A DNA stretch of 64,000 nt, taken from Octopus bimaculoides (taxonomy: Eukaryota). The translations under genes and the position numbers were made by a program. The DNA lies in the NCBI RefSeq assembly GCF_001194135.2, contig NC_068983.1, forward strand, positions 138,061,583 to 138,125,582. Direction: 5' to 3'. The notes beneath the pieces were generated by a model that did not search any database, was not told the DNA's origin, and saw nothing but the letters and a program-made list of their open reading frames with translations. Below are positions 5,297 to 55,595 of the stretch, piece by piece; position 1 is the first letter of the stretch, and each line of letters opens with the position of its first letter.

Positions 5297-5377
<81 letters not shown>

Positions 5378-8579: not shown

Positions 8580-8621
<42 letters not shown>

Positions 8622-9015
8622 CACACACACACGTACATGCACATTCATATATACATACATATACATACATATGCATATATACATGCATGTACACACACAT
8701 ATGTACAAACACACATTTGAAATATGGACGAAGTAAAAAGTAGATAGAAAGCAAGACTTGAAGGGGCGAGGGAGTAAGTCAATAAACATGTAGAAGTGAA
8801 TTAGTATGTTTAAAAAAACAAGGAATTAAAATTAACAACGGTGATAAAAATAAATTTCGTGGAAATTTGTAATTACAAGGAGTAATAAATATAAGATATG
8901 AATACAAGTAATAAAATACTATACTAAAAATATTAAAATTAGAATCAAAAGTGTTGAATCGAGAGACTTGATGACACTTGTTTATGATAGACAAAAGGAG
9001 AATAATAATATAAAA

Positions 9016-10270: not shown

Positions 10271-10339
10271 AACTCTATATTCATTTAATCTTCACAAATT
10301 CAATTCTACATAGTAACCCTAATAGAAGTTGTAATATTG

Positions 10340-10484
10340 ATTTCAAATTTTAGCACAAGGCCAGCAATTTCGGGAGCGGAGAGGTAAATCGATTACATCG
10401 ACCTCAGTAATCAACTAGTACTTATTTTATCGACCTCCAAGGAATTAATGCAAAGTCGACCACGGCGGAATTTGAACTCAGAAT
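10340..10484 (-). mobile_element. tRNA-derived SINE family A, 5'-truncated
   Basis: Reverse complement of the body at 21410-21500 (ctgagttcaaattccgcc..gtcgactttgc..gtcgataaaataagtac). Confidence 0.85.
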
Positions 10485-10790
10485 AGTAGTAGCAAGATTA
10501 ATTATAATTGTTATTTGAACTACAAATGTCAGCATAGTGGTATTGTATCCCGTTCCAATGTTACTACCAGCAACTCAGTAAACACGTATATAAGTTTATA
10601 TTAATATCTTCATGTTATATTACAATAAAATCATACATAAATATTCAGGAACTCCAAAAGGAAAGTGAAATTTCAAGCTGGAAATATGTTTTGAGCCAAT
10701 GGAGAACAGTAGCTAGTGCAATGTCTTATACACCACCAACTGCAAGGAAATGATCTTTTATTTCTATTATCATCATCATCTGAGTCATAT

Positions 10791-10994
10791 AAGGCGGTAT
10801 GCTGGCAGAATCGTTAGCATGCCGGGAAAAATGCTTAGTGACATTTCGTCCAACTTTACATACTGAGTTCACATTCCAGCGAGGTCAGCTTTGCCTTTCA
10901 TTCTCTGGGTCGATAAAATAAGTAACAGTTGAGGATTGGGGTCGACTTATTCCCTCCCCCAAACTTGCTGACCTTGTGCCAAAATTTGAAACCA
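10791..10994 (+). mobile_element. tRNA-derived SINE family A, near full length
   Basis: Head aaggcggtatgctggcagaatcgttagc, degenerate B-box gagttcacattcc, tail ccttgtgccaaaatttgaaac; aligns with the 21338 copy except for the tail. Confidence 0.88.
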
Positions 10995-11029
10995 CTATTA
11001 TATGAGTCATCGCCGTCGTCATGTATCGA

Positions 11030-11290
11030 ACGCCTGCAGTACATTGTCTTCCCGACTATGTTCTCCAGTTGCCATGCAGCTCCTCTCCAACCAACCAACT
11101 ACTGATATTGTTTACTATTCCTTCCATGATAATATTTCCAGACATCTACTTCTTCGACTATGGCCATAATACATGAGCTTTTGCTTTTTCGCAGTACTCA
11201 GGAGCTGTCGTCTGAGTATATTTGTTACTTTTTCATCAGTTGTATTTTTGTTATCGTTATTATTTTTATTTTCGATATTTCCATCGCCTT
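11030..11290 (-). mobile_element. RTE-like LINE 3' fragment
   Basis: Minus translation RQLLSTAKKQKLMYYGH followed after a frameshift by NIIMEGIV, resembling the RTE C-terminal motif LL..IK.RKL.YFGH...IMEG.V. Confidence 0.45.
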
Positions 11291-11331
11291 TTTACTTAAG
11301 TCTTGCTTCCAATGAAAAAGTGTCCTGCTGA

Positions 11332-11373
<42 letters not shown>

Positions 11374-12946
11374 NNNNNNNNNNNNNNNNNNNNNNNNNNN
11401 NNNNNNNNNNNNNNNNNNNNNNNNNNNNNNNNNNNNNNNNNNNNNNNNNNNNNNNNNNNNNNNNNNNNNNNNNNNNNNNNNNNNNNNNNNNNNNNNNNNN
11501 NNNNNNNNNNNNNNNNNNNNNNNNNNNNNNNNNNNNNNNNNNNNNNNNNNNNNNNNNNNNNNNNNNNNNNNNNNNNNNNNNNNNNNNNNNNNNNNNNNNN
11601 NNNNNNNNNNNNNNNNNNNNNNNNNNNNNNNNNNNNNNNNNNNNNNNNNNNNNNNNNNNNNNNNNNNNNNNNNNNNNNNNNNNNNNNNNNNNNNNNNNNN
11701 NNNNNNNNNNNNNNNNNNNNNNNNNNNNNNNNNNNNNNNNNNNNNNNNNNNNNNNNNNNNNNNNNNNNNNNNNNNNNNNNNNNNNNNNNNNNNNNNNNNN
11801 NNNNNNNNNNNNNNNNNNNNNNNNNNNNNNNNNNNNNNNNTATATATATATATATATATATATATCGTCACTTCCTTTTCCTGTTAATTTCCTTCTGATT
11901 ATATATTTACTCTCCTAATGAGTGTGATATAGTTTTGCTACAGTTTCTATTTTCAACATACTATATATAATATTTCTTTCTGTAGATATCAACCATATCA
12001 CCAAGGGAATCTTTCATCACCGATGTATATTTATTTAGCTACGCAGATTTAACTTATTCACTTTGTTCATTTAGACGTAATGTCTATATTCAAATATGTT
12101 TTAGCGACTATTATTCTCTCATTTTGAGTTACCGAGACTTCGCCTTTAACATGTTTCCTAATTTTACCTCAATTTTACCCGCTTAGATGAATCCCGATAA
12201 CACTGTAAAACCCATTTCAACGCTCAGCCATTTTTTAGCTCCTACATCGCTTTCTCTCTTTCTTCCTTGTATCTCCTTCCATCAACGTATTCCTACACCA
12301 TATCTCTTTCTATTCTTTTCTGTGTTTCCTGTTTTTTTTTTAATATTAACCTTCAAATAAATACGTTTTATTCAAAACTGTTTTATTGATATATTTATCG
12401 ATATCTTTACCCTTAGCCAGTTCTTTGCCTCCTTTTCTGTGGTTTAATGTTTTTTACTAGATTAAAAGAAAAGTATTATGCTCACCTTTCTTTTGACCCC
12501 CTTCGCATTTTAGTTCAAAATTTCCGCACCGTTATTCAATTCGTAAAGTTTTCTCACAAATGTTGTTTACTTTCTCCAGATTATTATTTCTATACAGTTC
12601 ACTTTCTTTCCCTCTTGCACACATTTTTAACAGTCTATTTAAGTTTTACTAAATCTTTTACTTCTATACGGGAATATTCAATTAATTATGCAACACCTTA
12701 TAAAATTCATACACTACTTATCAAATAGATAAAATTATCTTGGTTTTTATTTACTATTGATTGTGTCTACTATCAGCATCAGTTATTTCGTATTTGCTTC
12801 TTCACACTCTTATGGCCATCTCCTTCATATTATTACTGTGTCCTATTCCTATTTACTTTAACCCGTGTACATAATTTAATCTATCTATATTACAATACAT
12901 ACATACGTTTATACATACATACATATATAAATGTATATCTACATAC

Positions 12947-12992
<46 letters not shown>

Positions 12993-13211
12993 NNNNNNNN
13001 NNNNNNNNNNNNNNNNNNNNNNNNNNNNNNNNNNNNNNNNNNNNNNNNNNNNNNNNNNNNNNNNNNNNNNNNNNNNNNNNNNNNNNNNNNNNNNNNNNNN
13101 NNNNNNNNNNNNNNNNNNNNNNNNNNNNNNNNNNNNNNNNNNNNNNNNNNNNNNNNNNNNNNNNNNNNNNNNNNNNNNNNNNNNNNNNNNCATACTGATT
13201 ACTTGGATAAT

Positions 13212-13229
13212 TATGCCTGAGCAACATGA

Positions 13230-13296
<67 letters not shown>

Positions 13297-13311
13297 TGCC
13301 GCTCAGGCATA
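13212..13311. repeat. 20 bp inverted repeat (18/20) enclosing (TACA)n(TA)n
   Basis: tatgcctgagcaacatgata at 13212-13231 versus tatcatgccgctcaggcata at 13292-13311. Confidence 0.7.
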
Positions 13312-14395
13312 GTTACGCTAGTAATCGGTATATTTGTGGTTTAGAGTAAAGCGTGAGGTGAGTAAAGAGTGTAATATTAATGAATGAATTACAAAAGAAC
13401 AACAATTACGTCATCACTTTCATTAGCTTTCAGTTTTTTATGTTATAAGATGCAGTACACTCAGATGTGAGAGCTTGGCAACATCCTGTAGCCGAAAGAG
13501 CTGTAAGCTAATGTAGGTCATTACATAACTCCTGTTCGTTCGTCATTCATTAATGTATGTATGTATGTATGTATATTTGTATGTGGGAGCACTATAACTC
13601 AGCAAATAGAATCTTAGCAAGTAACATTTTAGACAGAGCCACAGCTTAGAAGCGCTAACATTACAAGTCCGAACTAAGCAAGTTCCCAATTTTGGCAAGT
13701 ATCCAATTCAGTATGTCTTGCACAAAAATGAAATAATTGATCAACAGAAATTGACGTCTTAACCTTTGAATTATAAATTGTAATACCTTTAAAAGCCAAC
13801 TAAACCAAATGCTACAATTTGTAATCCATTATCCAGTCAGAAAAATGGAAACCGAAATGAAAATTGTCAAAACACAAAGAGGAAAAGACAAGATCCTCTA
13901 CAGAGGGCATTCATAAAAGCTGGAACAAATAGCAAAAATGACTGTTTGCTGGCGATGCAGCGATGAGAATTGTTCTGGGTTGATTTCAACGCCTCTCAAC
14001 TACAGGGAAGAAGGAAACGCTGAGTATGCCTGTTAGCATACATGTATACTTTATTTGTGGGTTGACAAGACAACTGATGGTGTCATGTGACGATACCTCC
14101 ACAGTTGTCTAAGCGTGTCACATGGAAGTACTGGCGCTCGCCCCCATACTGGATAAGCACACATATATACTTATATATATATATATATNNNNNNNNNNNN
14201 NNNNNNNNNNNNNNNNNNNNNNNNNNNNNNNNNNNNNNNNNNNNNNNNNNNNNNNNNNNNNNNNNNNNNNNNNNNNNNNNNNNNNNNNNNNNNNNNNNNN
14301 NNNNNNNNNNNNNNNNNNNNNNNNNNNNNNNNNNNNNNNNNNNNNNNNNNNNNNNNNNNNNNNNNNNNNNNNNNNNNNNNNNNNNNNNNNNNNNN

Positions 14396-14443
<48 letters not shown>

Positions 14444-15472
14444 CGTGTGAGTGCGTGTGTGTATTTATATATATTCTTTTCTTTATTTTTCTTCTGTCAA
14501 CGTTAACTTAAAGGAAAACTGTCTAAAATATTGGATGCTCAGATTAATTAGCAGAATCATATATTGGCGGCCAGCCATTTTTATGTTGTGCAAACTCAAG
14601 CACATCTTAAATCTTCTAAGCTAATCTTTACTAGACAGTGAAGTTGTTTTTCAGAAGTTTCCTATTTCAGTTTTTTTCTTTTCAAACTGTCATGCAAACG
14701 TTCGACTATCTTTAAAATCACAATCGTGTTTTTTGGACATTGCAGTGTTTGATTATCAGTCTATAAACCCAAGAGTTGTCCCATCTTAAGTACCCAAATT
14801 GTCCAGGAGCACATCATTTAATTTTCTTACATTTTTCACGAATTGTTTCCACAAGCTTTACTGTTTTGGCCATGTGTCTGATTTCCTTCTCCCCCATCAA
14901 ACCTATTTTAAAGCATCAAACATAATATCTAGTGTAACCATATTACGCTTTCATTCTGCAGTGCTGTCTTCACTTCAGCTTGACAGTTTGTTTCTTGATA
15001 TAACATATTTGTAGTAAAAATAGCACGTAGAAAAATGATCTAATTCTTTTTGATATAAAAACAGAAATGAGAGGATGAAAGGTGAAGGAGTAAGATAGGA
15101 GGAAGTACTGCATAACCCTTAGTTGAAGGGTTATCATGTTCGTCGGCACTTTACCCCTTGCACCTCTGACTTAAACCATAATATCACATTCTATTCCCTC
15201 CTACTCACACACACCTACACCCCATCCACACATATCTTTGTGTTGACATACAACATATATAGCTACATTGCTATTATGGTGATACTACTATTGTTGGCAG
15301 TTGATTATTCAAAACTTGCTGGGTTAGTAGTGGTGGTGATATTAGTTGCATTAGTTCTCAAGCTAGTGACGATAGTCACAGTGATGGGTGGTATCTTTAT
15401 TTCGTAATTAGAGTTTTTCAGATTATTAACTACTTTAATGCTAGCTAGTGTGTCGAGAAGGTGTCATTGGGC

Positions 15473-19306: not shown

Positions 19307-19331
19307 TGATAATAACAATGATAATAATAAT
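19225..19331. repeat. (TAA)n microsatellite at the SINE tail
   Basis: Seen directly; abuts the minus-strand SINE 3' end. Confidence 0.95.
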
Positions 19332-19539
19332 GCTTTCAAATTTCGCCACAAAGGCAGTTTGGGGAAGGGCATGAGTGGATTACATCGACCCTAGTTTTCA
19401 ATTGGTACTTATTTTATCAACCCCGATAGGATGAAAGGCAAAGTCGACCTCGGCGAAAATTGAACTCAACGTAGTGACAGGCGAAAAGCCGCTAAGCGTT
19501 TCCCCGGCGTGCTAAAGATTCTACCTAGATAACTGCCCT
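19332..19539 (-). mobile_element. tRNA-derived SINE family A
   Basis: Reverse complement of the family A body (ggatgaaaggcaaagtcgacctcggcgaaaattgaactc). Confidence 0.85.
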
Positions 19540-20344: not shown

Positions 20345-21337
20345 AGATATATATTGCACGGTTCTAATGCATTAAGCGTTTTTAACTCATATCTTGCAAC
20401 ATAATATGCTTCGCCACCCTCAATCACAATTAGGGACGCTAAAACTTTTCCTAGTATATATATCAATTATTTCGTATATNNNNNNNNNNATATATATATA
20501 TATATAAATTATTTCAGTATTAACTTAGAGCAATTTGTAATCATACATTAGTAATCAAACTACGGGTCAGCATACTGAGAAGCAATCGACAATGTTAGTT
20601 GAGGGGTTGATATCATTTGATAAAAAGGCATTTACGGGGCAACTGGTATTATAATGTCGCGCTGAGAACTACTGGATTCTCCGACAAAATATGTAAAATT
20701 GCCTTATAAGCAAAAAGCATAGAAATAGGAATAGATAGAAATGATATATTTCTTATATAATTAGAGAATTGCCTAATTTAATAAATCCAATTTTCCGATA
20801 CGACATAAATATACTAAGACATTAAATAGGTACTGTTTTAAGGTTAACGGTGTTGGTAATATATAGCACTAAAGTCGAAACCGATAACATTAATGAACCA
20901 ATATATATATTAGATCAACCGAGTTGGAATTTAAAATTTGATGTGTAAGTATAAACATTCATTAGCCAGCGCTGCTAAAATATGTACTACAACTTCGTTA
21001 AAATTTATTTGGTTCTTACGTGAGGCAATTACATAAGGATTCAAAACTACATGGTCAGATGTTAATAAAACATAGGCCTATATGGAGGGTACATTCATAT
21101 AAAAAATGTGGTGTTGTCTTAAAAGAGAAACTAACGATTTTCTTTTAGAACGAAAATGGTTTGAAAGCAGAATTGTTGGCGCCTTGTATTTACGAAATCG
21201 AACATCATGCATGTTAGTGTCAGGCTCGCTGATTTTTAATCTTTCAGAAAAAAAAATGGACTTTCATCGATATTGCAATATTCTACAGATAAGAGTTTTA
21301 AAAATGTTCAAACAGAAACTAACTTTCACTAACTTTT

Positions 21338-21555
21338 AAGGCGGCGAGCTGGCAGAAACGTTAGCACGCCGGGCGAAATGCTGAGTGGTATTTCGTCTGC
21401 CGCTACGTTCTGAGTTCAAATTCCGCCGAGGTCGACTTTGCCTTTCATCCTTTCGGGGTCGATAAATTAAGTACTAGTTACGCACTGGGGTCGATGTAAT
21501 CGACTTAATCCATTTGTCCCCTCTCTGTTTAGCCCCATGTGGGGAATAAAGAAAT
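21338..21555 (+). mobile_element. tRNA-derived SINE family A, full length, 16 bp TSD
   Basis: A-box-like tggcagaaacg, B-box gagttcaaattcc; direct repeat agaaactaactttcac at 21314-21329 and 21557-21572. Confidence 0.92.
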
Positions 21556-24500
21556 TAGAAACTAACTTTCACAAAAAAGAATGATTACAATGACCTTTTA
21601 TTGGTTTGGATTCTGAGTGAAATGATTAATCAATGACGTGAGGATAATTTTGACAAGCAGCTAACAGATGGTAGTAAGATTTCGAAACAATTGTATTTGA
21701 AAAACATCGCTCATATGAGTTTCTTTTCAAAATATTAAGCAAGCTTTCGTATAATATGTGTGAAAACATTTTTAATTGCTTGATGATGTAAGAAGCAAGA
21801 GAATCGAATTGTCAGCTGAAGAAGTGTAAAATAGAGAAAGGGAGTACGTAAAAGTGATGAGCTGTATATTATGAGTGAAGTTTACTTAGAAATCGCATAA
21901 GTTTTTTTTCATTTTAAAGAGAAAAGATTTGGAAAGGCATAGATAGTTAGAGGGTGAGAGAAAAGAACATAAATGTTACAGATGATTATTTATTGAAGAT
22001 ATCGTAGACGAAGGAGCATTATCATGTGTGCATTCGGAGTTGAGTACAGATGTAACAGTTCTTAGGATGGAAATTGCTGTATAAGTGGCATGTTATTTAT
22101 TAGTTTGAAACATTGATATCTTGTCCTCATTTTGAAGAGTTATAGTTTTCATTAAAGACTTCCTTACATGCATAAGGTCTTTGAAGATAACTGAACAAAT
22201 CGCAGATCCCACAAAAAAGTGCCGTTCAAATAATTAAAAGACCCAAACTTTTATCACCCACAATAAAGATATATTCAGTGATTTTCTTCGGTTTTTGAGA
22301 CACCAAATGGAAAGGAAATGAAGTTCCGTCTGGATAGGATGGTAGTCAATCGCAGATTTTGTCATCGAGCGTGTCAAACTCGATACTGCTGATCGACAAA
22401 AATTCTTTACGTTTACAAAGCTGCAATTACTTACAACAGCGAAATGCAGCACATTCATAATATACTGACAGTTATGTGGCCTGAAATATCTGGCAACAAA
22501 GTATTCTGGCTACAAACACAGCATAGTACCAATAACAAAACAGAAACAACAAATGTTTGTCTACTATACAATGCAATTCACATTTGGTCTTCTTAGCTAG
22601 GGATAATACTTGTATCGTTATTCTATAAAAGCTCTGATCTGCAGAACAACTTTTGCCTCAATTTCTCTAGTTGGAATATAATATAGATATCAGGCTTCTA
22701 AGGAAATGCTGACAGCGACAACTAACTCATTAAGATAGAGATTTATCATCCATCTTTTGATCTTGAACAGTTTCGGTGCACTCATCGGCCTTTTTGAAAA
22801 GGTAAATAAAAATGAAGTACTAAAGTACTAGTGCTATTTCCATGAGAGTCCTGATGAAATATCTTGGGTGTAATGAAATCACACACAACATGCTTGACAT
22901 ACTGACGCAGACAAGCATTTTTACAAATACAAACATTCTCGATTTCAACTGCAGAAGGTCATCTGACTGATTGGCAAACTTTCACTCGCAAGCACATTAC
23001 GTACACTAGCCCAAAACCTTATATTTTTTCTGAGTCTTTCATCTATTCTCTTATAATACCTGCTATTTTGAGCTAACAAGCTATACATAACTGCTAGACA
23101 AACCCATCTGCAGATACGCCTTCTGTCATCAATATTGTGTCTGAACTCACGAACTATGTACAACAGTTTATCCAACCGTTTCTGCTTGAAATTACAACTC
23201 TTTAGAATTCTCTCTATGACACCACTTCCGCTACAGGCATTAATCATAGTTTAGACAAAATCTCAAGTAATGACAACCAGTATTATGAGCACTGTCTTTC
23301 TCCAACGACTAAATATTCGAAAATATTAAAAAAAACAAGTAGCGTCATGGCATATTTTCATATTTTAATATTTCAAGAAGAAAGCTATAAACATTATCGC
23401 GTGAGTTTGCTATCGGTTCCATTCTCCATAGATTCTGTTTTTATAAACCCCAGTTCAATACTTGAAGTTTCATTGTGATATCGAAGAACATAACTCCTCA
23501 GCCAAAGAAAGAAGTGATATCGTGACAACGTTAACTGTTTGTAGAACTGGGGTTGTCATTCAAATTCAGTATATATTCCAGAGGAACAATTCACATGTCT
23601 TGAAGTTATATTATTTAATATGCTGATTATTTTTGACATAAGGCAGAAAGAAATCCTGATTCAGAAACATTCTGCAATGGTAGCGATCAAAACAAAGAAC
23701 AAAGACACTTGAAAAAGACCAACTACTTCTTGCTGTGTTCACAGTTTGAGAGAAAAGCTATGTTCGATTTTTTTTTGGATGTAAAAATAAGATTGCAATG
23801 ACGAATTTATATACGAAGATATTCTATATTTTCTTAATATATGCTTTTATTTGTTTCCTTTTCGATTAAACTGTGTTTCTCTTATTCGTATTACTTAAAA
23901 CTAATGCGCTTTCAGGATTAAGCCACTACAGGGGACCTAGCGAAGAACCTACAATATAATGTAGATTGTCTTGGTAAGCTTAATTATGTATCATTCAAAC
24001 ATAAAAACAATATTTTGTAATTCTATGCTAACGAATCTACACAATCTACAAATGTTTTTGATTTATTTTTCATTTATATTGTTTATTCCATCTGATATCC
24101 CCTGGAGAATCTTTCAATATATTTAATTTCTACTTTTTTCTGACATTTTCTTATTTTGTTTTCTTGTCTGCGTCGATTGAAACAACTTGTAATGTTTATT
24201 TTAAATATAATTCTACTTTATCTAGAAAAGCTGAACTATACATACATATGTACGTACATATAGATACGCATACATTCAAACACACATATGCACCCCCCAC
24301 ACACATATGCACCCCCACACACATATACATAAACATATATATATACATGTCGTTTATAAACAATCTTGTTTTATAACGTTCAAAAATAAACAAGCAAGCA
24401 AACCAAAATATAATAATAGCCCTATATATGTATATCAATCTATCTAACTGTCTAAACAGATATGAAAGGGGCCAGTTTTTATCGTCTTTGTATTAGGATA

Positions 24501-26456
24501 ACGTTGCATTGTGTATATATAATAGGCAATAAATGGAGACGTTTGTTCTGATATGAACAAAGTTAAGCTGGTTGTATGCAATACGGAAGAAATAAATTGA
24601 GATAAATAAATCTTTATTCTTTCTATTAAGAAATGTATCAAACAAGAAGCGATCTGTAGATTGCATATAATTTATTGCTATTACTATTTCAATCGATCTT
24701 GATACGTATCCAACTATATTTGCTAATCATAACCAAAAGCAATCTCTTTCTCTCTGTATATAGTGCGCGTTCATCCATTGTTAACTAAATTTATCACTCT
24801 TGTTTTTGGGGTGCCACAAAAGACCAATGAATCTATTATCAGCTATGATGTTGATGTTTCGAATCCAAACAGTTCTAGAGAGCTGGCAGCGACACATAAC
24901 TGTGACATAGCTGCTAATCATGTGTTCGAATCAAAACGTATTTTTTGAGATGCTTACTCAGAAGGCTGGTCTATGAGAAATACTATTTTCTTTCAGAGAA
25001 AAATCAATTCCACAGTGGAGCCACCGTTTAAACCCCACACGCTATGTTCGTACTACTAGACGCAACCATCTGTTGTCATCAAATTGGTATTAATCCGGAG
25101 ACATGGTGGACAACATGTTACTCAACCCAGTGCAGATGTATGCAGTTTTCAGCAGCAATTTGCTTGAGAGTTGGACTGGAACGTAGAATGGATTTCAGTG
25201 CTTACCATGACACTCAGCATGAGAGGGGGTGTTACGAAAAGATAAATACACTTGCGGAAATATGGGAAGCAACGGCTGGCTGGCTGTATGAAGGATAAAG
25301 CGATTGGTCTAGAATTCTGCTTTACGAGCTTTACTTTTACATGTCAGAGTTGTTTGCCGGCGTCTTGGCAGGTTTCTACGCAACTAATAGCAGTTCAGAA
25401 GGTTTTCAGTTCTGTGAGTCGAAGAGCAGTGAGAAAAACCGACAAAAGGATGGTCTGGTTGGTAATTTTAGGCTTGCAGCATCTCTGTTAAACGCAGATT
25501 TCAACATTTGGTCAATGAAAAGGTTATCAATAATCTAATTGGTGATGCGCAAATGTGCGACGTTCCGAACAGTTCTATCCACGACAACCTCCATCTAATG
25601 AAATAAATTAAAGATACAGAGTGGGTAGAGAATCAGGAATGAGTGAAACTTTGATCAATTTAGAGCAGTAAAATAATCGACTTTCATAGAGTGAATTTGG
25701 TAGGCGGAAACTCTTCGGAAGCCTATCGTATATATACTGATTCTACTTTCTACCATCACTTTCTTAGCATTGTTACATATTGAACACAAGTACTAAGTGA
25801 AGATTTGATCGACGAAGCCATACAAATGTTTGTTGCTGCCTGGCCGCAATGACTGAAATACGTAAAATTATAAAAGGAAAGAATAAAAAGATATATATCG
25901 TCACCATGTTTATATTTATCTTTGAAAGCTTCAAGCTACAGCTATCAAATACCGTGGTCCTGTTAGAGAGTGTTTTGACACCACAGAAAATGTTTACTTG
26001 ACAGCTAATGAATAGCTTTACTTTGTTCATATCTTATTTTACCGTAGTTTTTTGGAATTGTGCACGTTTTATGATTGTCTTTTCCTCTTTTCCAGTAAAA
26101 TCTTATCGTATTACATTATATTTTTACAGTTCCTTCCTTCATCCTAAACGTCTCTTTTTTTTCTAAGGTACTCTTCTGTGAATTTTACGAGTTACGGTCT
26201 GCTTTCGTCGTTTTAATACTTCACTTGGTGGTGGTTCTTTCACAGACNNNNNNNNNNNNNNNNNNNNNNNNNNNNNNNNNNNNNNNNNNNNNNNNNNNNN
26301 NNNNNNNNNNNNNNNNNNNCCCCCACACACACACACAAACAAAGCTTTATCTATAAAAATATCTTTATATATGAATATATTCAAAGATGTGTGTGTGTGT
26401 GCATGTGTGTTTATATGTATATGTGTGTGAGTGTGTGTGTGAGTGCTTTTGGATGC

Positions 26457-27072: not shown

Positions 27073-27791
27073 GAAATGGTTGATGAATTGAAGAATTTAG
27101 AGTTGTGAGAGAAGCAATAGTATAGGTTAACAATAATAACGTGTGAAAAGGTCTGCCCTGGGCAAAGTATAAATAAGACGGAATCAAACATGAATTCGTA
27201 AAATTTACAGAAAATCCAACAAAAAAGAATTTTCTGGAAGAAGCAAGACAGAGAGTTTACACACACGCGCGCACACACATTTATAACACAAGCACACAAA
27301 TACGAATACACACACACGCACGCACACACACACGCACACACACAAATACACATGTGTGCAAGTGTGTGTGCGTGTGCTTATATGGAACACCATTGAGCTT
27401 GATTTTCTGATAGTGTAAGAATAATGTTTGTGGTATTAATTTGTTCAAAGCACATTTAATGTCACTGCGTAGCAGTAGTAATATTGGCGCTATAAAGTAA
27501 ATTAGGATTGGAACAAACTAGTAATATTTGATTTAAAAATCAATTAGGATGATAAACTAATAACGAATTTGTCATCGCAACTTCATTTGCTAAAGATATT
27601 TAGATTTGGTTATTATCACACCGTATTTATATTTTACTGCAGTATTAAATATGAGTCAAGAAAATGAATATGTTAATATTTAACCAGAATCTTGCAGAAT
27701 CAGGTGAACGACAAGTAAATTGTTTTACATTATCTAGTTACGGCTCTTCAAATCTACCATTAGACAATGGATTATACCATTCTTTAATAGT

Positions 27792-28005
27792 GTTTTCAAA
27801 GTTCAGCACAAGGCCAGTAATTTCGTGGGAGGGCTTAAATCGATTACATTGACTCCACTGTTCAACTGATACTTATTTTACCAAACCCTAAAAGATGAAA
27901 GGTAAAGCCGACTTCGGTCGAATTTGAACTTACAACGCAAAGTTGGACGAAATGCCGTTGAGCATTTTGCCCTGCGTGCTGGCGATTAACCCTGTTCACC
28001 GTCTT
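27792..28005 (-). mobile_element. tRNA-derived SINE family A
   Basis: Reverse complement alignment to the 10791 copy, including the ccttgtgc..aa.tttgaaa tail. Confidence 0.82.
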
Positions 28006-28275
28006 TGTGTCATTCCTTAATAGTTATTTCTTAATTTTATCAGTGTTAAAAATGTGGTAGAATTCTTAAAGAGCTTTTGGGTAGCTTTCCTTCGGATTTC
28101 TAGTGCCAATGAAGTCGATAAACAAAGTGCAGAGGAAAGTTTTCTCGAATTGTTCGTACTAATGCTGCATATTTAAAGTCTTGTGGCTAAGACAGAAATC
28201 AATTAAACCAGAAATATAAATTCATACACACACATACACATATATGTGTGAATGATTTTATACACACACACACAC

Positions 28276-29455: not shown

Positions 29456-30654
29456 NNNNNNNNNNNNNNNNNNNNNNNNNNNNNNNNNNNNNNNNNNNNN
29501 NNNNNNNNNNNNNNNNNNNNNNNNNNNNNNNNNNNNNNNNNNNNNNNNNNNNNNNNNNNNNNNNNNNNNNNNNNNNNNNNNNNNNNNNNNNNNNNNNNNN
29601 NNNNNNNNNNNNNNNNNNNNNNNNNNNNNNNNNNNNNNNNNNNNNNNNNNNNNNNNNNNNNNNNNNNNNNNNNNNNNNNNNNNNNNNNNNNNNNNNNNNN
29701 NNNNNNNNNNNNNNNNNNNNNNNNNNNNNNNNNNNNNNNNNNNNNNNNNNNNNNNNNNNNNNNNNNNNNNNNNNNNNNNNNNNNNNNNNNNNNNNNNNNN
29801 NNNNNNNNNNNNNNNNNNNNNNNNNNNNNNNNNNNNNNNNNNNNNNNNNNNNNNNNNNNNNNNNNNNNNNNNNNNNNNNNNNNNNNNNNNNNNNNNNNNN
29901 NNNNNNNNNNNNNNNNNNNNNNNNNNNNNNNNNNNNNNNNNNNNNNNNNNNNNNNNNNNNNNNNNNNNNNNNNNNNNNNNNNNNNNNNNNNNNNNNNNNN
30001 NNNNNNNNNNNNNNNNNNNNNNNNNNNNNNNNNNNNNNNNNNNNNNNNNNNNNNNNNNNNNNNNNNNNNNNNNNNNNNNNNNNNNNNNNNNNNNNNNNNN
30101 NNNNNNNNNNNNNNNNNNNNNNNNNNNNNNNNNNNNNNNNNNNNNNNNNNNNNNNNNNNNNNNNNNNNNNNNNNNNNNNNNNNNNNNNNNNNNNNNNNNN
30201 NNNNNNNNNNNNNNNNNNNNNNNNNNNNNNNNNNNNNNNNNNNNNNNNNNNNNNNNNNNNNNNNNNNNNNNNNNNNNNNNNNNNNNNNNNNNNNNNNNNN
30301 NNNNNNNNNNNNNNNNNNNNNNNNNNNNNNNNNNNNNNNNNNNNNNNNNNNNNNNNNNNNNNNNNNNNNNNNNNNNNNNNNNNNNNNCTTATATTCTCTT
30401 TACACTTATTTCATGTAATTCTGTTGTGTCCTATCATTCGTATTATCCGTATTATTTTTGAGGTCTTGAGGGTAATGAAGAAATTCTTGTTCTTATTGTT
30501 AACATTATTCGATTACCAATAAGTATTATTTATGCTAACTCTCGCCTACTCGTACAAAAAGGTAGATGCGTCATTTTCGGTTGGGAGTTCCAACTCTTTA
30601 TGAATGCGTTACGTTGTCCACCTTTTCCAGAATCCAGAATCCAAAATTACCGTG

Positions 30655-33610: not shown

Positions 33611-33812
33611 TTTTACTCTTTTATTCTTTTACTTGTTTCTAGTCATTGGACTGCGGGCATATTAGGGATACACTTCGAAAATTTTAGTCGATCAACTCGC
33701 TTCAGTATATATCGTTAATCTTGCACTTAGTTCGAATATCTGTTTTTGTTGAAACGTTACGTTACGGGTCCATAAACAAACCGTTGTCAAGCGATGAGAG
33801 GCAGACACAAAG
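33611..33812 (-). mobile_element. SINE family B body/tail
   Basis: ttactcttttattcttttacttgtttctagtcattggactgc tail and gttacggg..taaac..ccgttgtcaagcgatg body, shared with the 37516 and 49525 copies. Confidence 0.75.
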
Positions 33813-50553: not shown

Positions 50554-51289
50554 AAATATATATATATATATCAACAAAATATATGAATATAAGCATCTGA
50601 ATATATATATATATGTACCACATACTGTCTGTTTCTGCCATTTGTTGTTTAGCAAACGTATTCCATCCATGATCATGTCATATGTTTATATATCTGGAAC
50701 TACATTATACTTTTGAGACGGTAAGATGTCATCTGAGAGAAATTTTGTGGTTATTTCTTGTCAGCAAAATTGTAAATTAGCGTCATTCGAGTTTCTTTTA
50801 ATCCTGATTGGTCTTTTCAATTATATCTATCGTTTCGTTCTTTATATTCAATGATTTCTTGAAATTTCCAAGCAAGTTCTCACGTTTTTCTTTATCCCTG
50901 CTTTGCTCCTGTTGACTACAAACGTTGCTCTTTCAAATATATTGATTAACGTTTACATTACAAATCAACACACCGTAACACTATTTTAAGCATATAGTTT
51001 TCTTCAGTTAGTACGCCTCTTCTGCTTCTGTAAGTCAAATGAACTGGAGACATGCTGTCGCTGTTACCACTTCTACTGATTATTCTAATATATGTATATT
51101 GAGAAAATTATTGTTGATGTTTTAATAGGACGATACTTTGCGTAGTGGCCTCCTGGTTAGCTATTAATTAAATAAACTGCTTATGTAGACTTTCATATGA
51201 AAAAATATTGTCTACAAGGTTCACTGCCACCATATATATTATTTCACAAGTACTTATCTCAGCCCCCCACACACGCTACACACATCTAT

Positions 51290-51476
<187 letters not shown>

Positions 51477-51480
51477 ACCA

Positions 51481-51646
51481 TTTTTTTCTCGACCCCTTTT
51501 GATCGAACTTCCCCCTTTTCCCTTCCTACGATCCCTTTTGATCGACACACCCTTTTTTCCCCTTCCCCCTCCCAAAAAGAAAAGCTCTACATTGTATTTG
51601 TCCCATCTTTGTTGAGCCCTGTGTGGCTAATAAAAGAAATGTATCT
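51481..51646 (+). mobile_element. Short Tx1-type 3' tail module A
   Basis: Highly similar to 54671-54834; ends gccctgtgtggctaataaaagaaatgtatct; flanked by direct repeat tatctaacca (51471-51480, 51642-51651). Confidence 0.8.
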
Positions 51647-54600
51647 AACCAAACAACACCACCATCAGCGCCACCAAATACAGAAACAACACCATCACCA
51701 TCACCAACAACAGCACAAAAATCCAACCAAGAAGAGGAAAAGGAAAAAATAACCCCCCCATCCCCATCAACTCATACACCACATCCCAACAACCACCAAC
51801 AACCACCAATAATAGCAACATCAACAACACACTCACAAATTGATCCCAATACTCTTCCCCTCCCTTCTTTTGATTCCCTTCGTCGGAAAAAGGTGATACA
51901 GAAGAATGGCAAATGGCAACAGGGGGCGGGGGGAGAAGAGAAAGGGGAAAGAAAAGAAAAGACACGCAATCAATCAAATCAAGGAGAGTCAATACTCCCG
52001 AAAACACAACTTCCGCACAACACACACATTACCACCAGCAATACAAACACACAAATACCAAATGGCCCCACAATGTTGGCTCATACAATTCAGACCTAAT
52101 GCAATGCATTAGGTCAAAGACAATCATAACATAAGACAATGTCAAAACAAACAACCACCCACGCACAACACCACTACAACACATAAAAATCAAACACGTG
52201 ACACAAAACACGCTGAAATATAGGGAGATTTCGAAAGTACTTATCAAGAAAATTATATAAAAACCTCTTGACAGAAGATTGTGAGGTGAAGAACAACCAA
52301 CTTTCGCACAATAAGTGATTCTCTCTCTCTCTCACACACATTCTTTTCTTTTTCCTTTCGTCTGTAAAGCACAACTTTCGATAGGAACATGCTTAGCAAA
52401 GGTTGTACATATGTGCGTGGCTTGGGGGTCGCCTTGGAAACAAGGCTACCTGTTATGTGACATTGAATCACAGAATGTGTATATATCATAGCCATCAGTG
52501 AGACTCAACAGCACATGTTCGGCGTACAATTCGACATTTATTTTTTCCGTGTCTACCGAGAATGGGCGGAGGTGGTACCACAGTGCTTTTTTCGGAAGTG
52601 TGTGGACCTCAAAGTAAGAGTAATATTCCTAGTCCCGGAGGGTAGGCTGGTCGTCTTCGATGTAGATGGCAGTAATGTGTATGCATAACAGTTTATGTAC
52701 CGTCTTTTACATCATTGACAGAATAGTTAAGGAACCTGGCATGGGTGAGGCGCTAATCAATTTGGATCAATCGAAAGCTTTCGATAGGGTCGACCATCGC
52801 TACTTGGAGGCTGTCCTTACGGTCCCGTCTTCTGCGGTTGGATCGCTGCTTTATACAACGGCATCCGCTCGGTAGTTCGTGTAAATGGTCATCTATCCAG
52901 ACCATTTAACATCACGCGTTCGGTCCGTCAAGGATGCTTCCTCTCGTCGCTTCTATATGTACTGACTCTAGAGCCACTACTGCGGAAGCTGGCGACGCTG
53001 AGGGGCATCCTGCAAGAACTGGGATGCGGGAGGGGCCTATCTGCATACGCGGAAGACGTCACCGTCATAATGTCGAACCACAGGCATATCGACCCGGCCA
53101 GTGAGACACTAAAAGAATACGAAGCGGTAGCGGGAGGGAAAATTAACTCGGAAGAGTTAGTGGGCTTGCGGCTCGGCACCTGGAGAAGCAGGCCCATGCC
53201 GCCCAACAGCGTCTTCATCGTGGGATACTGGACCGACGGACAGGTTAAATTGCTCGGGGTCTGGTTCAGACCGGACCTCCAAATGGAGAAGAACTTGGAC
53301 GAGATAACGAGTAAGTTGGCTACTCTTACCCAGCAATGTGCCGAGAGGAAGCTATCCCTAAAAGGTCTGGTGGAGGTGGCGAATGCGTACATCGCGTCCG
53401 TCATCTATTACCGTCTGAACGACGTGCCTTGTCCTGACCCTAACATTACCAAATCGGAGCGCATGGTCTTCCACTTGTGTGGAAGGGAAGCGTTCCGATG
53501 GTTAGGCGATCCATTTGCTGTCAACATCTGCTAAATGGAGGGCTGGGCATGCCGTGGTTGATGCGCAGACATGCACTGAGACTGCGATATCTCTGGCGCT
53601 TCATAGACGATGGTGAACAGGTATGGTCGTCGTTTGTGAGACGCGCTTTCCTGCAGCTCGTCTCTTTGGCTGTTCTGCAGTCATGGATCAAACAGAGACC
53701 GAAGCTAGGCGAATGTCACTGCGAGTGCCACCTTTCTCTCGAGCAACTCTGCCTTTCGGGACCAAACTTGTGTGACTTTAATTCCACGAAGGCGTTCTAT
53801 AGAGGATTATTTTAGGTGGAGGTGCGACGACGTTCTTATGGGACAATCTGGGCGTCTACGGGGAACACCTGACCCGCCTCTTCAGGAGAACTTTCGGGCC
53901 TATGGACAATCACCAGAGATCCCTGGCCTGGCAGTGCTATCGGGAAGGATTGCTCGTTCGGGATAAGCTCTACAGGCACGGTTCGAGATACACCGGACCG
54001 AGTTGCCTGAGAGGCGGTCAGAGCGACGAAACCATTCTGCACGTACTCGTGCAGTGTCCAACCATTTCGGACCTGTGAGTTTATGTCGCGCGTAGGACGA
54101 CTTCGGTTATCGGCCGAGTTTATCGTGAATATTGGCCCGCCATCTTCCTTTAACCAGGAAGGCAAAGCAGTTTTCATTGTACTGGTGGCTATGGTGAAAG
54201 AATGTGTGTGGTGGACTCGTGCAAAAGGTTTAGAGACAAACACTTTCCTCTATGGCCAATCGCTTATCCACGTTTTCGAGTACCACTTGAAAAGGAAGGT
54301 CAGAATAGAGAGGTGAGAATAGAGAAGTTTTGTCTCATAAAATTTTCAATAAAAGGTGGGTGAATATAGCAAAGATGGTACGCGTGAATGACGAAACCAC
54401 TTTAAGCATGATCCTGTAAATCCCAAAGAGACAGCGCTTTGCTCTCGTGTTTCTTTCCCCGCTTGAGGTTACCGTGGTCTTTTCTGTAGGCTTTTCTTTT
54501 ACATTTTCATCCCGTCTTATTTTGCTGTTTACACGTCCGAAACGCTTTCGATCCCTCTTGATCCTTTCTTTCTTTCTTTCTTTCTTTCTTTCGAAAAGTT

Positions 54601-54670
54601 CTACGTTGTATTGTCCCCTCTGTATTCGGCCCTGCGTGGCAAATAAAGATATCTATCTATCTATCTATCT
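51647..54670 (+). mobile_element. Tx1/L1-clade LINE, 5'-truncated and internally deleted
   Basis: Low-complexity putative ORF1 tail (inferred), ORF2 remnant, pyrimidine-rich 3' UTR, AATAAA at 54642 and (ATCT)n tail. Confidence 0.85.
52389..54419 (+). pseudogene. LINE ORF2 (APE endonuclease N-terminus, RT, CCHC) pseudogene
   Basis: MLSKGCTYVRGL..IIAISET (APE); LDQSKAFDRVDH (52762), VRQG, LLYVLTLEPLL, AYAEDV (YADD to YAED, 53043), CLRGGQSDETILHVLVQCP (54004), stop at 54417-54419; multiple frameshifts. Confidence 0.9.
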
Positions 54671-54858
54671 TTTTTTCTCGATCTCTTTTGATCGAACTAC
54701 CCCCTTTTTTTCCTTTCCTACGATCCCTTTTGATCGACACCCCATTTTTTATCTCCTTCCCCCTCCCCAAAAGAAAAGCTTTATATTGTATTTGTCCCCT
54801 CTGTGTAAAGCCCTGTGTGGCTAATAAAAGAAATCTATCTATCTATCTATCTATCTAT
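54671..54858 (+). mobile_element. Short Tx1-type 3' tail module B with (ATCT)n on both sides
   Basis: Near copy of module A; ends gccctgtgtggctaataaaagaaatctatctatc. Confidence 0.82.
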
Positions 54859-55373
54859 GCACATGCATAGGCATTGACACACATGTACGGTATATATATA
54901 TATATATATTACGATAGATCCTGTCAAAAATGAGAGAAATGGGATTTATGCCGTCCAGGCTTTTCCAAGTGTGTTGGGCAACAGATTCACAGTGACACAA
55001 TACCATTCACTACATATGTATGCATATATACATAGGCATAGCCGAAACATTAAGAAATTAGCTTCGAATTATGAGATTTTGGCTTCGATACTGCTGTATT
55101 GAACACACGTATTTTATCAAAGCTTCAGGTCGATAATTCCCATGTAAGTGAATTGTTTAGTGTGCATTATTATGTCAGATATGTGTTTGTGCACAAGACG
55201 AAGGTAAATGGATCTACATCCAGTCAGTTGTAACCAGACGACAGGTGAACCGAGAGTTATACTGACATTTGTTGACGTGATAAACACTCAAACATAAAAC
55301 CAGCATTGATATAGAACAAATGCACACACACACACACACACATAAATTTATATGTTATATATATAATATATAA

Positions 55374-55595
55374 TCCTTTCTACTCTAGGTACAAGGCCTG
55401 AAATTTTGGGGAGGGGACTAGTCAATTACATGGACTCCAGTGAAATACTGGTACTTAATTTATAGACCCTGGAAGAATGAAACGCAAAGTCGACCTCGGC
55501 AGAATTTGAACTCAGAACGTAACGATAGACGAAATACCGCTAAGCGGTTGACGATAAACGAAATACCGCTAACGACTCTGCCACCTCACCGCCTT
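55374..55595 (-). mobile_element. tRNA-derived SINE family A with internal duplication
   Basis: Family A body; gata.acgaaataccgctaa duplicated at about 55524 and 55552; tail variant ggccttgtacctagagtagaaagg. Confidence 0.85.

What the first reader, a model, noticed from the sequence alone, without database searches (positions are those of the whole stretch)
21513..21555. tRNA-SINE 3' tail matches the 3' end of the Tx1/L1-type LINE in the same window
SINE tail TTTGTCCCCTCTCTGTTTAGCCCCATGTGGGGAATAAA-GAAAT versus LINE-type tail TTTGTCCCCTCTGTGTAAAGCCCTGTGTGGCTAATAAAAGAAAT (54791-54834): 36 of 44 columns identical. Shared 3' ends are the established sign of a SINE borrowing a LINE's RT, and the 16 bp TSD fits APE-type target-primed reverse transcription. 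Tail-sharing partners are mostly L2/CR1/RTE, so a Tx1/L1-clade partner would be unusual.
Basis: partly seen in the sequence, partly recalled or inferred. Interest (0 to 1): 0.75.

Follow-up and report, generated by a model that had tools for sequence, protein, structure and literature searches.

The report
Octopod SINE carries Tx1-type LINE tail
A short non-coding mobile element in this cephalopod DNA ends with the same 45-base tail as a Tx1-type (L1-superfamily) LINE in the same window. This is the usual sign that the short element borrows the LINE's copying enzyme, but it is rarely seen for this LINE group.

Summary
It matches the tail of the ORF2-bearing LINE copy (54610-54652) in 32/42. 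Random 44-mers score 5.9±1.3 (max 13) against 27 observed. A perfect 16-bp target-site duplication encloses the whole SINE.

A model built only from tails found elsewhere recovers four significant sites in the window: the SINE end and the three LINE ends. Those outside tails came from the Argonauta hians genome and two metagenome contigs.

In four independent LINE copies the tail lies about 230-270 nt after the ORF2 stop. The ORF2 has an L1-type APE endonuclease, an RT and a CCHC zinc-binding domain. Its RT is 36-37% identical to Xenopus Tx1 and about 26% to human L1. It groups with Tx1 in 93% of NJ bootstraps.

In 22 kb of Argonauta, ten copies of two SINE families end in the tail of the local LINE. 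So the SINE tail is LINE-derived, and trans-mobilisation by this Tx1-like LINE is the best inference, though untested.

Caveats: only one such SINE copy lies in the window. Five sister copies carry a different tail. A tRNA origin for the head could not be confirmed.

The parts
21314..21329 (+). 5' target-site duplication AGAAACTAACTTTCAC
   Evidence: Identical 16-mer at 21557-21572.
21330..21339 (+). Ten extra bases (TAACTTTTAA) between the TSD and the SINE head. They partly repeat the TSD end (TAACTTT).
   Evidence: Read directly from the sequence. The other copies start at (A)AGGCGG. Origin unresolved.
21340..21428 (+). SINE head with an A-box-like motif (GCTGAGTGG, about 21380-21388) and a B-box-like motif (GAGTTCAAATTCC, 21412-21424).
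   Evidence: Motifs read from the sequence. The head is shared with four other copies in the window. ARAGORN and Rfam detect no tRNA.
21429..21510 (+). SINE body (GGTCGACTTTGCCTTTCATCC...GATAAATTAAGTAC...GGGGTCGATGTAATCGACTT), CORE-like.
   Evidence: 77-85% identical to five other copies in the window. Positions 90-167 also match five SINE copies in Argonauta L004.
21511..21555 (+). LINE-derived 3' tail of the SINE: ATTTGTCCCCTCTCTGTTTAG-CCCC-ATGT-GGGG-AATAAAGAAAT
   Evidence: 37/45 identical to LINE tails B and C, 32/42 to A, 30/35 to the L005 LINE tail. Hit at E 2.1e-5 by a tail model built only from non-window sequences. Hairpin CCCC/GGGG, -7.1 kcal/mol.
21557..21572 (+). 3' target-site duplication AGAAACTAACTTTCAC
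   Evidence: It starts with AGAAAC, which resembles the SINE end AGAAAT, so microhomology for priming is possible (inference).
51284..51476 (+). (ATCT)n/(GTCT)n microsatellite that abuts the 5' end of tail-only unit C.
   Evidence: TRF, 48 copies; sequence.
51480..51640 (+). Tail-only LINE 3'UTR unit C (tail at 51596-51640).
   Evidence: 87% identical over 183 columns to unit B. Tail model E 1.4e-6.
52389..52685 (+). LINE copy A: remnant of the ORF2 start and endonuclease residues 1-105, with frameshifts and stops.
   Evidence: tblastn of the L005 endonuclease, aa 4-105, 32% identity, E 5e-5. An internal deletion of about 450 codons follows.
52681..54419 (+). LINE copy A: RT, CCHC (zf-RVT) and C-terminal part of ORF2. 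It has at least four frameshifts; the stop is at 54417-54419.
   Evidence: Pfam RVT_1 1.4e-12 and zf-RVT 6.5e-4. 73% nt identity over 1.7 kb to L005. tblastn 50-69% aa identity. Frames.
54420..54652 (+). LINE copy A 3'UTR, ending in tail A (54610-54652), followed by (TATC)n.
   Evidence: Tail model E 1.2e-4. The same ORF2-UTR-tail layout is seen in L002, L005 and L004.
54665..54834 (+). Tail-only LINE 3'UTR unit B (tail at 54789-54834), flanked by (TATC)5 and (ATCT)6.5.
   Evidence: Tail model E 2.1e-4.
10793..11000 (+). Sister SINE copy with the second tail type (...GACCTTGTGCCAAAATTTGAAACCACTATTA).
10332..10483 (-). Sister SINE copy, 5'-truncated, second tail type.
19325..19536 (-). Sister SINE copy, second tail type.
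27785..28003 (-). Sister SINE copy, second tail type.
55370..55595 (-). Sister SINE copy, second tail type, with a duplication in the head.

Best explanation
The element at 21340-21555 is a SINE with three parts: a head carrying pol III A/B-box-like motifs, a CORE-like body, and a 45-nt tail. The tail was copied from the 3' end of a Tx1-type (L1-superfamily) LINE family that lives in octopod genomes. That family is represented in this window by one internally deleted copy and two tail-only units at 51480-54834. The LINE's ORF2 protein has an APE endonuclease, an RT and a CCHC domain. It is inferred to recognise the conserved tail on its own RNA. The tail consists of a U/C-rich stretch, a short G+C hairpin, AAUAAAGAAAU and a short terminal repeat. 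SINE RNA that carries the same tail is taken as a template in trans. The endonuclease nicks the target, the RT primes on the nick (target-primed reverse transcription), and second-strand cleavage 16 bp away produces the TSD. Shown here: the tail homology, its terminal position in both elements, the TSD, the link between tail and ORF2, the LINE's domain set and Tx1 affinity, and that tail-sharing is a family trait in a second octopod. Inferred: recognition of the tail by ORF2p, trans-mobilisation, and the role of the hairpin.
For: Tail match: 36/44 to 37/45 identical, score 27 against random 5.9 ± 1.3, max 13. A 16/16 TSD encloses head, body and tail as one insertion. A covariance model built only from non-window tails finds four sites with E < 1e-3 in 128 kb of searched strand: the SINE end and the three LINE ends; the next hit is at E 0.06. 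The tail lies 235-272 nt after the ORF2 stop in the window copy, L002, L005 and Argonauta L004. blastn of the whole L005 LINE against the window hits the LINE copy, a small LINE fragment and the SINE tail (30/35). In Argonauta L004, six copies of a SINE with the same body and four copies of a second SINE all end in GGCCCTTGTGGCTAATAGAGAAATCTAT, and two LINE 3' ends lie in the same 22 kb. The LINE has an L1-type APE endonuclease with catalytic motifs, RVT_1 and zf-RVT, and a relative is collinear with human L1 ORF2p over residues 4-861. Its RT is 36-37% identical to Xenopus Tx1 (257 bits) against about 26% to human L1 (165 bits). NJ bootstrap for grouping with the Tx1 clade is 93.4%. A hairpin sits at the same place in nearly all tails, and its outer pair varies G-C / G-U / A-U. 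Published RT trees find only Tx1 in the L1 superfamily of molluscs (PMC10294476), and 13 recently active L1-Tx1 families are reported in Octopus vulgaris (PMC13282606).
Against: Only one SINE copy with this tail is in the window, and no further DNA of the source species could be fetched, so family status in this species is not shown. Five sister copies carry another tail that the tail model does not recognise. RNAalifold finds no consensus structure in the tails. The single-sequence fold z-scores are modest, 0 to -2.9, and the SINE hairpin is in a shifted register, so the structural argument is weak. The LINE copies in the window are dead (frameshifts, stops, internal deletion), so the source of the enzyme is not here. 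The SINE lacks the LINE's terminal ATCT repeat. It sits in ordinary DNA, whereas the LINE units here sit in (ATCT)n. The Tx1 tree uses 182 columns, NJ only, and a single L1 reference. No experiment was done.
Confidence: 0.78

Rival explanations
1. One-off chimera. The tail was joined to a SINE only in this copy, either by template switching from SINE RNA to LINE RNA during a single reverse-transcription event or by two adjacent insertions. On this view there is no SINE family with this tail in this genome.
For: Only 1 of 6 SINE copies in the window has this tail. Ten unexplained extra bases lie at the 5' junction.
Against: A perfect 16-bp TSD flanks the whole unit, so head, body and tail inserted together. 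In Argonauta the same kind of SINE carries this tail in 6 of 6 copies, and a second SINE family carries it in 4 of 4. A template-switch origin is in any case how a tail-bearing SINE family is born.
Confidence: 0.1
2. The tail does not belong to the Tx1-like LINE. It belongs to another non-autonomous element or another LINE clade that happens to lie downstream of the ORF2 remnant.
For: The best-matching window tails (B and C) are in 170-bp tail-only units that both start at the same base after (ATCT)n. They could therefore be a discrete small element.
Against: Four independent ORF2-bearing copies from at least three sources have the tail at the same distance after the stop, with collinear 3'UTRs. 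The ORF2-linked L005 tail matches the SINE tail 30/35. Units B and C share 3'UTR sequence with copy A upstream of the tail. No other site in the window has the tail.
Confidence: 0.04
3. The LINE is an L1-superfamily element but not a true Tx1-clade member. It could be a separate deep lineage, or a relative of the fish L1 'F' lineage.
For: Only one L1 reference (human) and one named Tx1 reference (Xenopus) were available. The tree has 182 columns and is NJ only. Outside the RT core, identity to Tx1 is only about 29%. Ohshima (2012) places Tx1 next to the vertebrate F lineage (PMC3472496).
Against: RT identity to Tx1 is 36-37%. That equals the full-length identity of the medaka elements to Xenopus Tx1; those medaka elements group with Xenopus Tx1 in 98% of bootstraps. 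Bootstrap for the LINE grouping with Tx1 against human L1 is 93%. Published RT trees report no non-Tx1 L1 clade in molluscs (PMC10294476). This rival does not change the main point, which is a tail-sharing partner from the L1 superfamily.
Confidence: 0.15
4. Chance resemblance of two A/T-rich, low-complexity ends.
For: The last 11 bases (AATAAAGAAAT) are A-rich and include a poly(A)-signal-like hexamer that is common in 3' ends.
Against: None of 40,000 random or shuffled comparisons reaches even half the observed score. The match includes the G/C-rich half. An independent model retrieves the site.
Confidence: 0.01

Closest known systems
UnaSINE1 / UnaL2 of the eel, and stringent-type SINE/LINE pairs in general (Kajikawa & Okada 2002; Ohshima & Okada 2005; cited in PMC3747384)
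   Same: The SINE and LINE share about 40-60 nt at the 3' end, with a short stem-loop and a short terminal repeat ((TGTAA)n in the eel; ATCT or ATT units here). The LINE RT is thought to recognise the tail and mobilise the SINE in trans.
   Different: The partner there is an L2-clade LINE; here it is a Tx1-type, L1-superfamily LINE. The eel pair was tested by retrotransposition assay; this pair was not.
ZmSINE2/ZmSINE3 with LINE1-1_ZM, and SINEX-3_CR with L1-1_CR (Ohshima 2012, PMC3472496)
   Same: SINEs whose 3' ends match an L1-clade LINE, with a conserved 3' stem-loop. They were taken as evidence for stringent recognition within the L1 clade.
   Different: Those are from plants and a green alga, belong to the L1 clade proper, and end in poly(A). 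This one is from an animal, is Tx1-type, and ends in a non-A repeat.
SINEU and Tx1-Mar of crocodilians (Kojima 2015, PMC4494074)
   Same: A Tx1-clade LINE is proposed as the engine of a SINE family.
   Different: SINEU has snRNA-derived heads and poly(A) tails. That link rests on shared target preference and shared 5' heads, not on a shared 3' tail.
Kibi, Koshi and crocodilian Tx1 families that insert into microsatellites (Kojima & Fujiwara 2004, as cited in PMC4494074)
   Same: Tx1-type LINEs found inside microsatellites. Here three LINE units lie head-to-tail inside (ATCT)n (51284-54858).
   Different: The targets there are (TC)n, (TTC)n, (TTCC)n and (TTTC)n. Here the repeat equals the LINE's own terminal unit, so insertion into earlier LINE tails or RT slippage cannot be separated from true target specificity. 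The SINE copy is not in a microsatellite.
Octopus OR1/OR2 CORE-SINEs (Ohshima & Okada 1994; listed as CORE-SINEs in PMC4758252 and PMC4824008) and the RepeatMasker class tRNA-Core, reported as dominant in octopus (PMC8967140)
   Same: Same host group. The same layout of head, conserved core and variable tail. The body here looks CORE-like.
   Different: No OR1/OR2 or CORE consensus was available to the tools, so identity with those families was not tested. None of the papers I could read names a LINE partner for them.

Membership tests
SINE (generic definition) | Short (under 500 bp), non-coding, repeated at many loci | tested here: met
   216 bp. Five further copies of the head and/or body in 64 kb. 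Related copies in Argonauta.
SINE (generic definition) | Insertion flanked by a target-site duplication | tested here: met
   16/16 bp TSD.
SINE (generic definition) | Head derived from a pol III-transcribed RNA (tRNA) with an internal A/B-box promoter | tested here: inconclusive
   A- and B-box-like motifs are readable. ARAGORN finds no tRNA in the window or L004. Rfam finds no tRNA, 5S, 7SL or snRNA match even at E up to 10.
CORE-SINE superfamily | Central domain homologous to the CORE consensus | not testable with these tools
   No CORE, MIR or OR2 consensus is in any library offered. The resemblance is from memory. The literature lists octopus OR1/OR2 as CORE-SINEs (PMC4758252, PMC4824008).
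Stringent-type SINE/LINE pair | 3' tail of the SINE homologous to the 3' end of a LINE in the same genome | tested here: met
   The same holds in Argonauta.
Stringent-type SINE/LINE pair | Conserved stem-loop in the shared tail, with compensatory change | tested here: inconclusive
   A 3-5 bp G+C hairpin sits at the same place in 16 of 18 tails, and its outer pair varies G-C / G-U / A-U. RNAalifold gives no consensus, z-scores are 0 to -2.9, and the SINE hairpin is shifted in register.
Stringent-type SINE/LINE pair | Short terminal repeats after the tail | tested here: met
   LINE ends: (ATCT)n in the window, ATCTAT in Argonauta, (ATT)n in L002 and L005. Argonauta SINEs end in ATCTAT. The window SINE copy ends at GAAAT(T) without the repeat.
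Stringent-type SINE/LINE pair | Tail-dependent trans-mobilisation of the SINE by the LINE protein | not testable with these tools
   Needs a retrotransposition assay.
Tx1 clade of non-LTR retrotransposons (L1 superfamily) | RT groups with Xenopus Tx1 rather than with L1 proper or other clades | tested here: met
   BLASTP: 36-37% identity and 224-277 bits to Tx1, against 26-28% and 162-193 bits to human L1. NJ tree, 182 columns, 1000 bootstraps: 93.4% with vertebrate Tx1, excluding human L1 and R2. Limits: one L1 reference, no ML, no RTclass1.
Tx1 clade of non-LTR retrotransposons (L1 superfamily) | N-terminal APE-type endonuclease of the L1 kind | tested here: met
   The L005 endonuclease hits only L1 endonuclease structures, and the catalytic N, E, D/N, D and H motifs align. 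The window copy keeps endonuclease residues 1-105. Relatives P0138 and P0143 hit Exo_endo_phos.
Tx1 clade of non-LTR retrotransposons (L1 superfamily) | CCHC zinc-binding domain C-terminal to the RT | tested here: met
   zf-RVT in the window copy (E 6.5e-4, below the Pfam cut-off), in P0002 (8.6e-9) and in P0004 (4e-6).
Tx1 clade of non-LTR retrotransposons (L1 superfamily) | Sequence-specific insertion (many Tx1 families) | tested here: inconclusive
   Three LINE units lie head-to-tail within (ATCT)n. Only one locus was seen, and the repeat equals the LINE's own terminal unit. Other (ATCT)n arrays in the window carry no LINE.
Tx1 clade of non-LTR retrotransposons (L1 superfamily) | ORF1 upstream of ORF2 | not tested
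   L005 has an open frame running off its 5' end and overlapping the ORF2 ATG. No full 5' region was obtained.

The most novel reading that the evidence does not exclude
Octopod Tx1-type LINEs use stringent, tail-specific template recognition, which would be the first case in an animal L1-superfamily lineage. A single Tx1 lineage and its close sisters would then be the engine behind the large octopod SINE expansion (about 8-12% of octopus genomes). That engine would also drive the majority tail type seen in this window, whose partner is still unknown.
Probability: 0.4. Interest if true: 0.65.

Novelty: new member of a known kind. Interest (0 to 1): 0.5.

Why it matters
SINE/LINE tail sharing is textbook for the L2, CR1 and RTE clades. 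The L1 superfamily is the standard example of relaxed, poly(A)-based template choice. In a 2012 survey only three L1-tail SINEs were found among 58 pairs, all in plants or an alga. An animal Tx1-type LINE with a conserved, non-poly(A) tail shared by abundant SINEs would support the idea that stringent recognition is ancestral in the L1 superfamily and was relaxed later. It would also name a candidate engine for the octopod SINE expansion, which genome papers describe without naming a partner LINE. In practice it gives a classification handle (a tRNA/Core SINE with an L1-Tx1 tail) for the many 'unclassified SINE' families in octopus repeat libraries. It also gives a pair that can be tested in a retrotransposition assay.

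Tried and rejected
1. Two scans of JGI metagenome contigs, one for the SINE body and one for the tail motif, both returned nothing. The second should have hit L002, so that collection does not hold the contigs that the protein index points to. As a result no more DNA of the source species could be obtained.

2. Looking for source names to classify the LINE gave nothing useful. The third protein search, seeded with a turtle relative, finally returned Swiss-Prot Tx1.

3. PDB comparison alone only shows 'L1-like, not R2-like'. It cannot separate Tx1 from L1.

4. The first bootstrap run used rooted clade matching and gave meaningless deep supports. It was redone with unrooted splits.

5. RNAalifold on the MAFFT tail alignment gave no structure, because the loop length differs between lineages. 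I did not pursue count of structure pairs on that alignment for the same reason.

6. I tested whether the second tail type is a diverged version of the same tail. There is only weak pairwise similarity to the L002 and L005 tails, and neither tail model hits it. This is left open.

7. I tested whether 51641-52388 is the LINE's 5' part. Only low-complexity matches were found. Unresolved.

8. The P0005 look-up found no contig. L007 adds a LINE 3'UTR whose tail is cut or diverged. L003 (ENA) is from a different organism without these SINEs.

Full report
**What is in the window**

The window is A/T-rich (35% G+C), microsatellite-rich eukaryotic DNA with 6.9 kb of N. Its repeats and their closest relatives are cephalopod. 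The LINE ORF2 described below is most similar to proteins from Argonauta hians and from unnamed assemblies. The SINE body recurs in the Argonauta genome. I infer an octopod source. The species was not identified.

**The observation**

- 21513-21555 against 54791-54834 gives 36 identical of 44 columns.
- The copy at 51597-51640 gives the same figure.
- The tail at 54610-54652 gives 32/43.
- One base further 5' the match is 37/45.

The local score is 27. Twenty thousand random 44-mers from the window give 5.9 ± 1.3 (max 13). Twenty thousand shuffles of the LINE tail give 5.7 ± 1.2 (max 14).

The 16-bp direct repeat AGAAACTAACTTTCAC lies at 21314-21329 and 21557-21572 and is perfect. Ten extra bases (TAACTTTTAA) sit between the 5' repeat and the head.

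**The SINE**

The element at 21340-21555 has three parts:
- a head with an A-box-like and a B-box-like motif;
- a body that I recognise from memory as CORE-like;
- the 45-nt tail.

Five other copies in the window share the head and/or body at 77-85% identity. All five end differently, in ...CCCTCCCCAAAnTTGCTGGCCTTGTGCCAAAATTTGAAAnnAYTATTA.

Neither ARAGORN nor the Rfam tRNA model recognises a tRNA in any of these heads or in the Argonauta copies. So 'tRNA-derived' rests on the motifs and on the literature on octopus SINEs. That literature covers the tRNA-derived OR1/OR2 CORE-SINEs (PMC4758252, PMC4824008) and reports tRNA-Core as the dominant class (PMC8967140).

**The LINE**

From 52389 to 54652 lies one copy of a LINE with a large internal deletion.
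- Endonuclease residues 1-105 are recognisable at 52392-52685.
- The sequence then jumps to the RT at about 52681.
- It continues through the RT, a CCHC zinc-binding domain and the C-terminus, with several frameshifts and in-frame stops, to a stop at 54417-54419.
- A 233-nt 3'UTR ends in tail A (54610-54652), followed by (TATC)5.

Two 170-bp tail-only units follow the same pattern: unit B at 54665-54834 and unit C at 51480-51640.
- They are 87% identical to each other.
- They share 3'UTR sequence with copy A.
- Both begin at the same base directly after an (ATCT)n run, and both end in the tail.

So three LINE units lie head-to-tail within (ATCT)n between 51284 and 54858.

**Does the tail belong to this LINE?**

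Yes. Related ORF2-bearing contigs were fetched through the protein index.
- L002 (a JGI contig) ends ...GGGCCCTTGTGGCCAATAAAAGAAATC(ATT)n, 272 nt after the ORF2 stop.
- L005 is a 3.9-kb, 24.7x-coverage ENA contig that is a nearly full-length element. It is 73% identical to the window copy over 1.7 kb. It ends ...GTTTAGGCCCTTGTGGCCAATAAAGAAACGATTATTAC, 258 nt after the stop.
- In Argonauta hians (L004) the tail CAGCCAGGTGGCTAAGAAAGAAAT lies 270 nt after the stop. A second, 5'-truncated copy ends CGGCCCTTGTGGCTAATAAAGAAATCTAT.

blastn of the whole of L005 against the window hits three things: the LINE copy, a small LINE fragment at 25.5 kb, and the SINE tail at 30/35 identity.

**Independent test of the tail family**

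I built a covariance model from 14 tails, none from the window: 4 LINE tails and 10 Argonauta SINE tails. I searched the window with filters off. Four hits have E < 1e-3:
- 51598-51640 (E 1.4e-6);
- the SINE tail at 21515-21555 (E 2.1e-5);
- 54611-54652 (E 1.2e-4);
- 54792-54834 (E 2.1e-4).

The next hit is at E 0.06. The second SINE tail type is not found at all.

**Is tail sharing a family trait?**

In the 22-kb Argonauta locus, six copies of a SINE whose body matches the window SINE end in ...TGTCCTTCTGTGTTCGGCCCTTGTGGCTAATAGAGAAATCTAT. Four copies of a second SINE with a different body end the same way. This is the tail of the LINE in the same locus, and several copies have recognisable TSDs of 11-15 bp. 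So the partnership is a family-level feature in at least one octopod. For the species of the window, only one copy was seen.

**Which clade is the LINE?**

- The L005 endonuclease matches only L1-type endonuclease structures, and the catalytic motifs align.
- A 43%-identical full-length relative (P0138) is collinear with human L1 ORF2p over residues 4-861, at E 1e-73 against 1e-25 for R2.
- RVT_1 and zf-RVT are present.
- A search seeded with a turtle relative returned Swiss-Prot YTX2_XENLA, the Xenopus Tx1 ORF2 protein.
- BLASTP of the octopod family (P0170, P0002, P0004) gives 36-37% identity in the RT core and 224-277 bits to Tx1. Against human L1 it gives 26-28% and 162-193 bits. Tx1 against human L1 is 25%.
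- I built an NJ tree of 182 RT columns with three R2 structures and an R2-like RT relic from the window as outgroups. It puts the cephalopod group with Xenopus, turtle and medaka Tx1 elements, excluding human L1, in 93.4% of 1000 bootstraps.

The limits of the tree are one L1 reference, NJ only and a short alignment. The result agrees with published RT trees that find only Tx1 in the L1 superfamily of molluscs (PMC10294476). It also agrees with the 13 recently active L1-Tx1 families reported in Octopus vulgaris (PMC13282606).

**Structure of the tail**

Nearly every tail can form a 3-5 bp G+C hairpin at the same place:
- GGCC-CUUGU-GGCC in L002 and L005;
- GGCC...GGCU in Argonauta;
- AGCC-CUGUGU-GGCU in the window LINE;
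- CCCC-AUGU-GGGG in the SINE.

The hairpin is often enclosed by pairing between the upstream UCU(G) and the downstream (A)AGA. The outer pair varies G-C / G-U / A-U. Four of the eight SINE-LINE differences fall in the hairpin and leave a hairpin in a shifted register.

The evidence is weak. Fold z-scores are 0 to -2.9, and RNAalifold finds no consensus on the MAFFT alignment. I treat the hairpin as plausible, not shown.

**Mechanism**

The best reading is the standard stringent-type partnership. The LINE's ORF2p recognises its own 3' tail. SINE RNA with the same tail is used in trans. The APE endonuclease nicks the target and the RT primes there. The start of the TSD (AGAAAC) resembles the SINE end (AGAAAT), which would allow a few base pairs of primer-template annealing; this is inference. 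The 16-bp TSD reflects staggered second-strand cleavage.

The LINE units in the window sit inside (ATCT)n, which equals the LINE's terminal repeat. This may be target preference of the kind known for microsatellite-specific Tx1 families (PMC4494074). It may instead be insertion into older LINE tails, or a composite 3' end. One locus cannot decide.

**Comparison with what is known**

Tail sharing is well known for L2, CR1 and RTE partners. For the L1 clade, a 2012 survey found 3 of 58 pairs, all in plants or an alga (PMC3472496, PMC3747384). The one published Tx1-SINE link (SINEU and Tx1-Mar) rests on shared targets and heads, and those SINEs have poly(A) tails (PMC4494074). I found no paper naming a LINE partner for octopus SINEs. 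Repbase Reports and subscription journals were not searchable, so prior description cannot be excluded.

I therefore rate this a new member of a known kind: an ordinary mechanism with an unusual partner clade.

**Verdict**

Noticed in passing
window 10332-10483(-), 10793-11000(+), 19325-19536(-), 27785-28003(-), 55370-55595(-): Five sister SINE copies share a second tail type (...GGCCTTGTGCCAAAATTTGAAAnnAYTATTA). It resembles the L002/L005 LINE tails only weakly and is not found by the tail models. Its LINE partner is unknown.
   Followed up: partly
window 51284-54858: Three LINE units lie head-to-tail inside (ATCT)n. Both 170-bp tail-only units start at the same base, so they may be a discrete non-autonomous unit or part of a composite LINE 3' end rather than random 5' truncations.
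   Followed up: partly
window 51650-52250: A 600-bp A/C-rich tract (44% A, 29% C) lies between unit C and the ORF2 start of LINE copy A. Only low-complexity matches were found elsewhere. It may be a 5'UTR or ORF1 remnant, or unrelated.
   Followed up: partly
window 41700-42540 (-): An RT relic with YMDDLKLY matches only R2-type reverse transcriptases among solved structures. It is a second, R2-superfamily (possibly R4/Dong-like) LINE. I used it as an outgroup.
   Followed up: partly
window 25523-25668 (+): A small isolated fragment of the same Tx1-like LINE family (RT residues about 117-164 of P0170).
   Followed up: no
window 49560-49740 (+): Another SINE-like repeat with a related core (GAATAAGTACCAGG...AGTACTAGGGTTGATTCATTCGAT) but a different tail.
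   Followed up: no
window 30443-30484 and 28163-28199 (+): Weak hits of the independent tail model (E 0.06 and 0.14). They may be decayed tails.
   Followed up: no
window 63566-64000; 62306-62886; 33702-34210: Three tandem repeats: a 56/111-bp unit running off the window end, a 52-bp unit in two blocks, and a 262-bp duplication.
   Followed up: no
L004 (Argonauta hians) 1475-15309: Two different SINE families (six and four copies in 22 kb) share one LINE tail. One LINE lineage apparently serves several SINE families.
   Followed up: partly
proteins P0005 / P0121: These are annotated in NCBI as Herbaspirillum sp. (MAG) proteins but are 69% identical to this cephalopod LINE ORF2. This looks like host DNA contaminating a bacterial bin.
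   Followed up: no
L005 (ENA ERZ25513664 NODE_8): A 3.9-kb contig at 24.7x coverage that ranks eighth in length in its assembly. It looks like a collapsed high-copy LINE from low-coverage host DNA, which suggests the family is abundant in that organism.
   Followed up: no
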